A stretch of 64,000 nt of DNA, from contig NC_079166.1 in NCBI RefSeq assembly GCF_947568905.1, forward strand, positions 63,426,001-63,490,000, read 5' to 3'. Made by a program: the position numbers and the translations under genes. Source of the stretch: Ostrea edulis (Eukaryota). The notes below the pieces were generated by a model. That model did not search any database. It was not told where the DNA came from and saw only the letters and a program-made list of their open reading frames with translations. Of this stretch, positions 29,294 to 32,200 are shown one piece after another. Position 1 is the first letter of the stretch. The number at the start of each line of letters is the position of its first letter.

Positions 29294-32200
29294 CTATGAT
29301 AAGTACTCCTTCTCATCCTCTTGGTCTTCCTTCCTGAACTTCTCCTCCAGGTGTTCTGGTATTTCCACCTGATGTAAGTTCTCCATGCCCTGTTCCGGTT
29401 CATCGCCAATCAAGATGTCGATGAGGTTCATGATGGTTGGTATATTGCTCCTCTGCGATTCCCACTTGTGCAGTTCTCGGATAATGATATACGTGTTCTT
29501 TTCTTTTATGAATAATCTTCCCTCTTTTGTTGCACATAGCTATGTAACAAAGAATATATCTACATATGTAAATTAATTTTCTCAAAGACCCAGTTTCATC
29601 CACAATCTAATTTAGCCCTAAAATTATGACTGTCATTTCAAACTACACACGTTACTGAAGGGTTGATAAAAAATACATGTATATGAGATCAAGTAGCTGG
29701 TACATACATCACATTCACAAATACGCATATCTCACTATTTTCTTTCAACGGTCAAAATTCACTGAAAGTACGGCTACATGTGTTGAACACAATTAAGACA
29801 CATTTCATCTGAACTATCCCTATTTCAATTTCCATAGCTACAAATCATATGAATATAGTTTTCGTTGACACATGCAGCCCATGATTTCAATTCAAAAATT
29901 GCTAATTTTGCTTTAGTTTTTGGCAATATTTCAGTAAATATTAAATAAAAAAACTAAAATCGCAAACTCTATGATACCCTATTCAACAACAGTACATAAT
30001 ATGCCCGTGAAAAGCTAATATAGGGTGTTTTCTTACATCATGATTTGTAGAACTTGTCTTCAAGTAGTATCGGCAATCATCAGGGTGTGACATACTTTCT
30101 TTGCATCGAAAAAACAAGGCAAATCATGTACTCTCTATGTAATCTCTATGTAATATTTTCCCTTGGCATAAAATGTATGTGTACAAAGTTTAATGGTCCT
30201 TGCCCAAACGAATCGGTCTGTATCCTGCTACTACAACCTTGACCTTAAAAAACAATAGTCATCCTCCACTTGCCATAAAGTGGGGTCCTAGTCCCCAACA
30301 GTTCGGTTTGTATACTGCCTACAAAGTTTTCCAAGTGATACTGTGACCTTGACCTTGAAAAATAATAGGCACCTTCCTCTCATCATGGTGCTCAAATGTG
30401 CCAAGTTGTAAAATCCTAGAGCTTACAGTTCGGTCTGTATCCTGCCCACAAGGTCCGGACAGACAGACGAACGGACGGACATAGCCATACTAAAATACGT
30501 CATAAGAATAGGAATCTATTTGGGTGGATGATAAATTTTCATTTTAACTTGGATATTACTGATTTTCAGAGAAATTGAAGAATTAAAATACAGAGCCTGA
30601 AATAGCTGTCATTACACTCAGTCTTTAACAGGAAAACTTCTAATTTTAATAGTATGATACTATGTAATAGGCTGAGAAAGAAGAACGAACTTCAAGTTTT
30701 GAATTGTTACAATAATACACGTATAGAGTAAACTTGCCAGAAACTAAACACTTTCACATTTTGGTAATTAATTTTTTGTTTTACACTGTTTGGTCTGCTT
30801 ACTCATTATCAGACTGTACCTTTAACACTGCCTGTAATAACTGTACCTTTAACACTGCCTGCAATAACTGTATCTTTAACACTCCTGTAATAACTGTACT
30901 TTTAACACTGCCTGTAATAACTGTACCTTTAATACTGCCTGTAATAACTGTACCTTTAACACTGCCTGTAATAACTGTACCTTTAACACTGCCTGTAATA
31001 ACTGTACCTTTAACACTGCCTGTAATAACTGTATCTTTAACACTGCCTGTAATAACTGTACTTTTAACACTGCCTGTAATAACTGTATCTTTAACACTGC
31101 CTGTAATAACTGTACTTTTAACACTGCCTGTAATAACTGTACCTTTAACACTGCCTGTAATAACTGTACCTTTAACACTGCCTGTAATAACTGTACCTTT
31201 AACACTGCCTGTAATAACTGTACCTTTAACACTGCCTGTAATAACTGTACCTTTAACACTGCCTGTAATAACTGTACCTTTAACACTGCCTGTAATAACT
31301 GTATCTTTAACACTGCCTGTAATAACTGTACCTTTAACATTGCCTGTAATAACTGTACCTTTAACACTGCCTGTAATAACTGTACCTTTAACACTGCCTG
31401 TAATAAGATGCGCCTTATCTCTGGATTCGGTTCCCTAGTTTTATCAGCGGGCAGGTATTGGATCTCATCTGGAAGTTTCTCCATGTCATCATCATCAAAT
31501 TCCTCTGGGCCGGCCAGGGGAAGCAGAAGGAAAGACAGGATGTTTACCTTGTCACTAAGCAACCACTCGTGGCATGCTGTGAAGACGAAATATACATTTA
31601 CAATAACTCCCTGTTCTTATGAAATTGAAGTGGGTGAATTTTGTTGTGTTGGTGTCAGCTTTATGCATAGAAACAGTTCAAAATATAAATATAAGTAATA
31701 TCCGTCTTCATTTTGGAGTGATTTGCATGCAAATAACACAACTCCATCTAACCCCAAATCAAGAAGACAGTTTCTCCTCAAGAGATATATATTCTATCCT
31801 GTACATAATGTGTGCTTTAAGAATGAATAAGTTAAAACACATCCGAGAAATCTGATATGGTTGGAAAGTGGACATGAGGAAAATGAAAGCTTTCAAATTT
31901 ACCTTTCATTGCATTGTCGAAATGATTTAACATGAGCAATATACACTTTTGATAGTAAAGTTCTACATGTCACTTCAACAGATGATAAACAATCATGGTA
32001 TATTCCTTTAATATATAACTGTATTTATAAGTCAAGGTGCATTGAGGTCTATCATATATATATTTACCATCATCAAAGCAGCAGTTTTTAATACAGCTGA
32101 CAACCCCCAACCTTCTAATGTCGGACTGCATGTAATTAACAAACGGTAGTAACCTCTGAATCACCCACTGGTCTCGGGTGAGAATTTCATCTCGTATGTG

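What the first reader, a model, noticed from the sequence alone, without database searches (positions are those of the whole stretch)
30814..31406. HGH1 exon 2 ends in a ladder of 16 in-frame 5' splice sites
The repeat unit is the last 21 nt of the exon plus the first 6 nt of the intron (TTATTACAGGCAGTGTTAAAG|GTACAG). It is 27 nt long with no stop, so each downstream GT donor adds a VQLLQAVLK nonamer into the conserved C-terminal helical region. Of 19 in-frame units, 16 keep GT and 3 have AT. A 1-bp deletion then puts the last units, including the one followed by the original intron sequence, out of frame. Each unit also contains a TACAG acceptor-like site. This could act as a copy-number-tunable splicing rheostat or isoform generator in the eEF2 chaperone HGH1 (function established in yeast; consequences here are inference).
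Basis: partly seen in the sequence, partly recalled or inferred. Interest (0 to 1): 0.8.

Follow-up and report, generated by a model that had tools for sequence, protein, structure and literature searches.

The report
Splice-donor minisatellite in oyster HGH1 intron
In the European flat oyster, the last 21 bases of an HGH1 exon plus its splice signal have been copied head-to-tail 22 times into the next intron; this is a known, usually harmless kind of repeat, and all available evidence shows only the first, original splice site in use.

Summary
Window 30813-31406 (minus strand) is a 27-nt tandem array of 22 units at 96% identity. Its first unit is the last 21 nt of an HGH1 coding exon plus GTACAG. 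Units 1-19 are in frame: 16 keep GT and 3 have AT. Unit 20 has a 1-bp deletion and brings a TAA into frame. Units 21-22 are out of frame.

The array is real. Consensus-unit contigs sit at 11.6x and 11.4x single-copy depth in DNA runs from two studies, against about 10.8-11.0 expected from the assembly.

The window is Ostrea edulis (GCA_947568905.1). Both RefSeq HGH1 isoforms, and spliced contigs from two likely-RNA runs of a ~97%-identical organism, join the first donor (31386) directly to the next exon (29539). No ladder isoform was found. Contigs cannot exclude rare ones, and raw O. edulis RNA reads were not available.

Saccostrea, Magallana and Crassostrea have the same exon end without any array. 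One individual carries an extra frame-breaking unit.

This is a young, tolerated "mirage" splice-junction minisatellite, as in human F7, IFI6 and CBS and in amphioxus Adh3. It shows no sign of being a rheostat. The scan has already reported many such arrays elsewhere in this genome.

The parts
32068..32743 (-). HGH1 large first coding exon (start of RefSeq isoform X2, MMSLKD...; ends ...CCFDD + G, phase 1). Isoform X1 adds an upstream coding exon at about 33705-33770.
   Evidence: tblastn with oyster HGH1 proteins, translation, donor G|GTAAAT read, spliced contigs in X1/X2.
31386..31576 (-). HGH1 middle coding exon (191 nt; ...CHEWLLSDKVNILSFLLLPLAGPEEFDDDDMEKLPDEIQYLPADKTREPNPEIRRILLQAVLK). 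Its last 21 nt are the exonic part of repeat unit 1.
   Evidence: Pfam DUF383 E 3.9e-22, tblastn, RefSeq protein P0060, contigs of X1/X2 covering 31386-31574.
31384..31385 (-). Authentic, most upstream 5' splice site GT (AAG|GTACAG; 5 of 9 matches to CAG|GTAAGT). This is the donor seen in use.
   Evidence: Loose end at 31386 in X1 and X2 whose letters are the start of the next exon. RefSeq isoforms read LLQAVLK|LCATKEGR. Match count.
30813..31406 (-). 27-nt minisatellite of 22 units (unit TTATTACAGGCAGTGTTAAAG|GTACAG). 18 units keep GT, of which 16 are in frame including the authentic one.
   Evidence: TRF, unit parse, k-mer depth 11.6x and 11.4x against 10.8-11.0 expected.
30868..30893 (-). 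Unit 20: a 26-nt unit (one C missing) with AT instead of GT. It shifts the frame and brings TAA (30876-30878) into the exon's frame, so donors 21 and 22 would give a premature stop.
   Evidence: Unit parse and sequence.
29540..31385 (-). Intron between the middle and last coding exons (1846 nt). Its first 572 nt (31385 down to 30814) are repeat copies.
   Evidence: Exon coordinates.
29294..29539 (-). HGH1 last coding exon (LCATKEGRLF...EKEYLS, stop TAG), intact and 86% identical to Saccostrea. Acceptor is ttgttacatag|CTA.
   Evidence: tblastn, sequence, RefSeq protein.
46309..46661 (-). Second array of the same kind in this window. The end of an open exon (...[14 protein letters not shown]) plus G|GTAAGT is repeated about 9 times in 36/40-nt units. 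It is context for HGH1, not part of it.
Evidence: TRF, sequence, parse.

Best explanation
A young, lineage-specific minisatellite arose by tandem duplication (slippage or unequal exchange) of a 27-nt segment straddling the HGH1 exon/intron junction. This is a 'mirage' or splice-junction minisatellite.

The authentic donor is still the most upstream copy, directly next to the unique exon sequence, and it is the one the spliceosome uses. The other 17 GT copies lie in the intron as silent or nearly silent pseudo-sites and are removed with it. The array is tolerated, not selected: its units are losing GT and reading frame, and they differ between individuals. That the unit is 27 nt, a multiple of three, is a one-in-three coincidence.

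Shown here:
- the array and its register on the exon end;
- its reality in independent reads;
- its absence from other oyster genera;
- the first-donor junction in gene models and in a close relative's spliced contigs.

Inferred:
- that pseudo-sites are unused in O. edulis tissues;
- that the first site is chosen by the 5'-to-3' preference shown for human F7.
For: (1) Array and register.

(2) Not an artefact. Consensus-unit contigs are at 471.2 against 40.7 depth in X3 (11.6x) and 57.3 against 5.02 in X6 (11.4x, a different study). The window predicts 10.8-11.0 copies of those 31-mers.

(3) First donor used:
- The window is identical to GCA_947568905.1 OX387706.1.
- RefSeq O. edulis HGH1 isoforms X1 (396 aa) and X2 (370 aa) differ only at the N-terminus, and both read ...ILLQAVLK|LCATKEGR.
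- Contigs of 1122 and 1322 nt in X1 and X2 skip intron 1 and break at 31386. Their next 30 letters are the reverse complement of CTGTGTGCAACAAAAGAGGGAAGATTATTC, which is the first 30 nt of the last exon with one synonymous change.

(4) Derived state. Saccostrea echinata, Magallana gigas and Crassostrea virginica have ...LLQAILK|GT at the same position, and TRF finds no repeats there.

(5) Decay. Three units have AT, three have A at -1, and unit 20 has a 1-bp deletion. X6 holds a unit with a 2-nt deletion at about 3x depth, plus SNPs.

(6) Precedent. In F7 IVS7 only the most upstream of 5-9 identical donors is used. The same holds for LMNB2 and PDGF. IFI6 and CBS use only the first three (PMC1557585). 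Amphioxus 'mirages' do not disturb normal splicing (PMC3087553).

(7) Cost of a ladder isoform. The junction is one residue before the end of helix 277-290, followed by a 3-residue turn, in a confident alpha-solenoid model (pLDDT 92.7). This region aligns to yeast Hgh1 structure 6HB1. Each unit would lengthen that helix by 2.5 turns, which is more likely to harm than to tune the protein.
Against: - No raw RNA reads of O. edulis itself were examined.
- The two spliced contigs come from a differently labelled organism that is about 97% identical. It is not known whether that organism has the array.
- Contigs keep only the dominant form, so isoforms at a few percent would be invisible.
- RefSeq models are predictions.
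- The unit length (27 nt) lies between IFI6 (12 nt) and CBS (31 nt), both of which use donors 2 and 3.
- The authentic donor is weak (5 of 9 matches), which could allow leakage to identical neighbours.
- Classical in-vitro work with duplicated donors often favours the intron-proximal copy (my own recollection, not checked here).
Confidence: 0.75

Rival explanations
1. Limited ladder, as in IFI6 and CBS. Besides the authentic donor, the next one or two identical donors (units 2 and 3) are used at low level. This would give HGH1 with 9 or 18 extra residues (VQLLQAVLK, VQLLQAMLK) as splicing noise without a selected role.
For: Units 1-3 all have GT, and units 1 and 2 are identical. The donor is weak. 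[quoted passage not shown] The products would be in frame and so escape nonsense-mediated decay.
Against: No such isoform appears among the three RefSeq protein accessions. None appears in the dominant contigs of X1 and X2. No protein fragment with extra nonamers was found in the protein collection, although that collection holds no O. edulis transcript fragments for this region at all.
Confidence: 0.2
2. Many of the 16 in-frame donors are used, and array length tunes the isoform mix or the HGH1 dose (a rheostat or isoform generator).
For: 16 in-frame GT donors and no stop through unit 19. Array composition differs between individuals.
Against: All transcript-level evidence shows the first donor. 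The array is absent in other oysters, whose HGH1 is otherwise 78-81% identical. Frame-breaking and GT-losing units accumulate. The insertion would extend a packed solenoid helix. Arrays of this type are reported as frequent and unselected in this genome by earlier scan notes, which were not re-tested here.
Confidence: 0.03
3. The array is an assembly artefact, meaning an over-expanded or spurious repeat.
For: Tandem repeats are error-prone in assemblies. No single read or contig spanning the whole array was seen, because Logan contigs collapse it.
Against: The k-mer depth of consensus units is 11.6x and 11.4x single copy in runs from two studies, which matches the 10.8-11.0 expected from the assembled array. 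Both edges (exon to unit, and unit to 3' flank) are present in read-derived contigs (X3 records 8 and 9 and the loose end at 31136).
Confidence: 0.02
4. The pseudo-donors are unused as splice sites but still have an effect. A cluster of U1-binding sites just downstream of a weak authentic donor could raise local U1 recruitment and so help that donor, or could suppress premature cleavage in the intron.
For: The authentic donor matches only 5 of 9 consensus positions, and 17 further GT copies follow within 570 nt. This is an inference from general knowledge of U1 biology.
Against: There is no direct evidence. Other oysters manage with equally non-consensus donors (6 of 9) and no array. The F7 study concluded that pseudo-sites simply do not compete.
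Confidence: 0.05

Closest known systems
Human F7 intron 7 (IVS7) 37-bp VNTR
   Same: It is a minisatellite whose first monomer spans the exon/intron boundary, so the authentic donor is followed by identical pseudo-donors. Only the most upstream site is used physiologically. It is polymorphic (PMC1557585).
   Different: F7 has 5-9 copies of 37 bp (4 exonic + 33 intronic), not a multiple of three. The oyster array has 22 copies of 27 bp (21 exonic + 6 intronic) and is in frame. For F7, first-donor use is proven by minigenes. Here it rests on gene models and a relative's contigs.
Human IFI6 (interferon-inducible 6-16) intron 2 minisatellite
   Same: The authentic donor is followed by many (25) reiterated donors, and use of extra donors gives length variants.
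   Different: [quoted passage not shown] No such use was seen for oyster HGH1. The original IFI6 paper could not be opened, so unit length and frame are from my memory only.
Human CBS intron 13 31-bp VNTR; LMNB2 and PDGF junction repeats
   Same: These are tandem repeats that reiterate an exon/intron junction. [quoted passage not shown] LMNB2 and PDGF use only the authentic donor (PMC1557585).
   Different: Unit sizes differ (31, 100 and 81 bp). They are vertebrate genes, and CBS extra-donor products are out of frame.
Amphioxus 'mirage' minisatellites (Adh3, globin genes BflGb6/BflGb9)
   Same: This is the named class: minisatellite-like tandem duplications spanning exon-intron boundaries. They are unstable in length, most units carry AG/GT signals, and normal splicing is not disturbed (PMC3087553).
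   Different: They are in a different phylum. The globin units are 150-160 bp, and both donor and acceptor sides are affected. Here the unit is short and on the donor side only.

Membership tests
Splice-junction ('mirage') minisatellite (F7 IVS7 / IFI6 / CBS / amphioxus Adh3 type) | Head-to-tail tandem array with a minisatellite-size unit | tested here: met
   TRF: period 27, 22 copies, 96% matches, score 1111.
Splice-junction ('mirage') minisatellite (F7 IVS7 / IFI6 / CBS / amphioxus Adh3 type) | First monomer spans an authentic exon-intron boundary | tested here: met
   Unit 1 is the last 21 nt of the exon plus GTACAG. The exon end at 31386 is fixed by oyster homologues, the RefSeq protein, the conserved intron position in three genera and spliced contigs.
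Splice-junction ('mirage') minisatellite (F7 IVS7 / IFI6 / CBS / amphioxus Adh3 type) | Donor sequence reiterated inside the following intron | tested here: met
   18 of 22 units keep GT after AAG/AAA.
Splice-junction ('mirage') minisatellite (F7 IVS7 / IFI6 / CBS / amphioxus Adh3 type) | The authentic (most upstream) donor is the one used, and the copies are silent or nearly so | tested here: inconclusive
   The first-donor junction appears in RefSeq isoforms and in contigs of two likely-RNA runs of a ~97% identical organism. Rare use of other donors cannot be seen in contigs, and no raw O. edulis RNA reads were laid.
Splice-junction ('mirage') minisatellite (F7 IVS7 / IFI6 / CBS / amphioxus Adh3 type) | Instability or polymorphism between individuals | tested here: inconclusive
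   Run X6 holds variant units (a 2-nt deletion and SNPs) that are absent from the reference. Copy-number differences could not be resolved because contigs collapse the array.
HGH1 (Pfam DUF383 + DUF384; yeast Hgh1) | DUF383 and DUF384 domains in one protein | tested here: met
   The exon hits DUF383 at E 3.9e-22. The product of this locus carries PF04063 and PF04064.
HGH1 (Pfam DUF383 + DUF384; yeast Hgh1) | Sequence homology to structurally characterised yeast Hgh1 | tested here: met
   phmmer to PDB 6HB1 'Protein HGH1' gives E 2.4e-36 over residues 25-340. The model is an all-helical solenoid, pLDDT 92.7.
HGH1 (Pfam DUF383 + DUF384; yeast Hgh1) | Cochaperone role in eEF2 folding | not testable with these tools
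   Known from yeast (PMC11651573 abstract). Assumed by orthology.
Multi-donor in-frame ladder (IFI6-like isoform generator) | Unit length a multiple of three with an open frame | tested here: met
   27 nt, and units 1-19 are open.
Multi-donor in-frame ladder (IFI6-like isoform generator) | Transcripts or proteins differing by whole units | tested here: inconclusive
   None was found among RefSeq isoforms, cluster members, protein searches or contigs. However, no data set with the needed depth for O. edulis was available.

The most novel reading that the evidence does not exclude
The first two or three identical donors are all used in O. edulis, as in human IFI6 and CBS. That would give HGH1 variants with a 9- or 18-residue extension of a solenoid helix. 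Array length or composition, which varies between individuals, would then shift HGH1 splicing efficiency or isoform ratio, making this a natural in-frame VNTR-splicing polymorphism in a conserved eEF2 cochaperone.
Probability: 0.12. Interest if true: 0.5.

Novelty: new member of a known kind. Interest (0 to 1): 0.2.

Why it matters
As a single locus it matters little. It is one more splice-junction minisatellite, and HGH1 appears to be spliced normally.

Its value is as a clean natural test case. There are 16 in-frame donors with identical context at 27-nt spacing in an invertebrate. The 5'-to-3' 'first site wins' rule established for human F7 could be tested here without nonsense-mediated decay hiding the minor products. 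It also adds to the picture, already raised by earlier notes of this scan, that such arrays are unusually common in the flat oyster genome. That genome-wide question concerns how minisatellites are born at splice junctions, and it is more interesting than this one gene.

Tried and rejected
- **Reads on the whole gene.** Following the tool's own advice, I laid the part with 11 copies beside it (31110-32790). The exon-to-exon joint is therefore seen as a loose end at 31386, not as a measured skip. Donors in units 12-22 were not covered.
- **Joined exon models.** I did not build, search or fold any joined exon model. This rules out a junction pattern for 'unit n + next exon' and a ladder-isoform protein. 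I used the stored RefSeq protein by reference instead, so ladder junctions were never searched as DNA.
- **Protein searches for ladder products.** I searched with exon plus in-frame read-through, the first exon and P0060:226-370. None found proteins with extra nonamers. They also found no O. edulis transcript-derived fragments at all, so this blank is weak.
- **Isoform X1 against X2.** The 26-aa difference looked at first like a possible ladder product. The alignment shows it is an N-terminal extension.
- **Recursive splicing through the units.** Rejected. The unit has AG|GT (TTAAAG|GTACAG), but the sequence before it is purine-rich with no pyrimidine tract.
- **Intra-array splicing.** A donor i to TTATTACAG|G acceptor j splice is possible on paper and in frame, but there is no evidence for it.
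- **Second array's gene name.** Pfam on the exon before the second array gave no family, so its gene name is unconfirmed.
- **Array at 45845-46078.** It does not visibly abut an exon.
- **IFI6 paper.** The original paper (PMC306954) is not held.
- **Oyster literature.** A search for oyster papers on such repeats found nothing relevant.

Full report
**What is there**

On the minus strand, window 30813-31406 is a 27-nt tandem array. TRF reports 22.0 copies, 96% matches and score 1111. The sequence was read. A script cut it into units starting at 31406:
- Units 1-19 are exact 27-mers with the consensus TTATTACAGGCAGTGTTAAAG|GTACAG. They translate as LLQAVLKVQ in the exon's frame.
- Sixteen of them have GT after the AAG/AAA. 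Units 11, 13 and 19 have A at -1.
- Units 4, 12 and 14 have AT.
- Unit 20 has lost one C, also has AT, and brings TAA (30878-30876) into frame.
- Units 21 and 22 have GT but are out of frame.
- After unit 22 the unique intron continues (TCTGATAATGAGTAAG...).

**The gene and the exon end**

The exon upstream (31576-31386) hits Pfam DUF383 at E 3.9e-22. tblastn with oyster HGH1 proteins gives three coding blocks: 32740-32054, 31571-31386 and 29539-29297. The proteins switch blocks exactly at ...LLQA(V/I)LK|LCAT.... The donor of the first intron and the acceptor of the last exon were read directly.

A locus fetched for the RefSeq protein is base-for-base identical to the window. The window is therefore Ostrea edulis, assembly GCA_947568905.1, chromosome OX387706.1.

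The protein aligns to the yeast Hgh1 crystal structure 6HB1 at E 2.4e-36. Yeast Hgh1 is an Hsp90 cochaperone needed for eEF2 folding (PMC11651573).

**Is the array real?**

Logan contigs of two DNA runs from two different studies were laid on 31110-32790.
- The contig made of consensus units has depth 471.2 against 40.7 for the flanking single-copy contig in X3. That is 11.6x.
- In X6 the figures are 57.3 against 5.02, or 11.4x.
- In the assembled window the same 31-mers occur 10.8-11.0 times on average.

The copy number of perfect units is thus reproduced. Both edges of the array are present in read-derived contigs.

X6 also holds units not present in the reference. These include one with a 2-nt deletion at about three times single-copy depth, so the array differs between individuals. 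Frame-breaking units are not confined to the far end of the reference allele.

**Which donor is used?**

Three lines of evidence all point to the first donor.

1. NCBI lists isoform X2 (370 aa, two accessions) and isoform X1 (396 aa) for O. edulis HGH1. Aligned, they differ only by an N-terminal extension. Both read ...EIRRILLQAVLK|LCATKEGRLF....
2. Two runs of a differently labelled organism are marked as likely RNA. Their exons are about 97% identical to the window. They contain contigs of 1122 and 1322 nt that skip the first intron (32067-31577) and break at 31386. The next 30 letters are the reverse complement of CTGTGTGCAACAAAAGAGGGAAGATTATTC. That is the first 30 nt of the last exon (29539 downwards) with one synonymous difference.
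3. No protein with extra nonamers turned up in three searches of the large protein collection.

Limits of this evidence:
- Contigs keep only the dominant form.
- It is unknown whether the relative has the array.
- The protein collection holds no transcript-derived O. edulis fragments for this region.
I followed the tool's advice and laid the part with 11 copies.

**Evolutionary state**

Saccostrea echinata, Magallana gigas and Crassostrea virginica have the same phase-0 exon end (...LLQAILK|GT...) with ordinary unique intron sequence after it. TRF finds no repeat in their loci.

The array is therefore derived in the Ostrea lineage. With most units identical, it is young. Differences among units are mostly G-to-A changes that ignore coding or splice-site value: three destroy GT, one changes Val to Met, and one deletion breaks the frame. 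This is the pattern of an unconstrained minisatellite, not of a maintained coding ladder.

**What a ladder isoform would do**

An AlphaFold2 model of the RefSeq protein built on 29 homologues is confident (pLDDT 92.7, pTM 0.88). It is an all-helical solenoid. The exon junction (K289|L290) lies one residue before the end of helix 277-290, which is followed by a three-residue turn and helix 294-302.

Each extra unit would repeat the last seven residues of that helix plus VQ, adding 2.5 turns. This is more likely to disturb the packing than to tune it. That is an inference, because no ladder isoform was modelled.

**Comparison with what is known**

The kind is known.
- Borensztajn et al. 2006 (PMC1557585) describe several human genes with minisatellites whose first monomer spans an exon-intron boundary.
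- In F7 IVS7 (37 bp, 5-9 copies) only the most upstream of identical donors is used, through a 5'-to-3' oriented process.
- In LMNB2 and PDGF only the authentic donor is used.
[quoted passage not shown] The HGH1 array meets the structural criteria of this class. The behavioural criterion (first donor used) is supported but not proven for O. edulis itself.

**Earlier notes of this scan**

One search shows that the scan has already reported many such arrays on other pieces of this same genome. Those notes claim a roughly nine-fold enrichment at exon ends. I did not re-test that figure.

I did confirm a second example in this window. At 46309-46661 (minus strand) an open exon end plus G|GTAAGT is repeated about nine times. 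Its gene identity was not confirmed.

**Verdict**

The anatomical reading is right. The rheostat or isoform-generator idea is unsupported.

The most likely account is a young, polymorphic, tolerated splice-junction minisatellite with first-donor splicing (about 0.75). The main rival is low-level use of donors 2-3 as in IFI6 and CBS (about 0.2).

It is a new member of a known kind. Interest is low for the locus itself and moderate only as a convenient in-frame test case for 5' splice-site choice.

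Noticed in passing
window 46309-46661 (minus strand): A second donor-side junction minisatellite. The exon end ...[14 protein letters not shown] plus G|GTAAGT is repeated about 9 times in alternating 36- and 40-nt units. One unit has lost GT (ACAGAAAG) and one has GTAAAT.
   Followed up: partly
window 12586-13333, 16711-17086, 45845-46078, 48546-48962: Several other young minisatellites lie in the same 64 kb: 53 nt x 14 at 98%, 47 nt x 8 at 100%, 39 nt x 6 at 96%, and 46 nt x 5 at 97%. 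The 45845-46078 array does not visibly abut an exon. The others were not checked against exon ends.
   Followed up: no
window 31836-31872 (HGH1 first intron): A ~35-nt segment has very high contig depth in all four runs (up to 1400 against 40 in X3), with many different loose ends on both sides. This looks like a fragment of a high-copy dispersed repeat inside the intron.
   Followed up: no
L001 (Saccostrea echinata JAVQLB010000054.1), 1001-54069: The Saccostrea HGH1 gene model spans 53 kb, with introns of about 10 kb and 42 kb. The same three coding exons take 2.4-4.5 kb in Ostrea, Magallana and Crassostrea. This reflects either large insertions or an assembly or annotation problem.
   Followed up: no
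window 31575-31576 versus contigs of runs X1/X2: The first two bases of the middle exon differ between the window (CA, codon GCA Ala) and the related organism (AG, codon GAG Glu). Other oysters have Glu or His here (..FDEEHH..), so the O. edulis 'DACH' is a local peculiarity.
   Followed up: no
window 30786-30812 (minus strand, just after the array): Seventeen nt downstream of the last unit's donor lies TGA|GTAAGC, a better intronic donor core (GTAAG) than the authentic GTACAG. Using it would read through stops, so it is probably irrelevant, but it belongs to the original pre-expansion intron.
   Followed up: no
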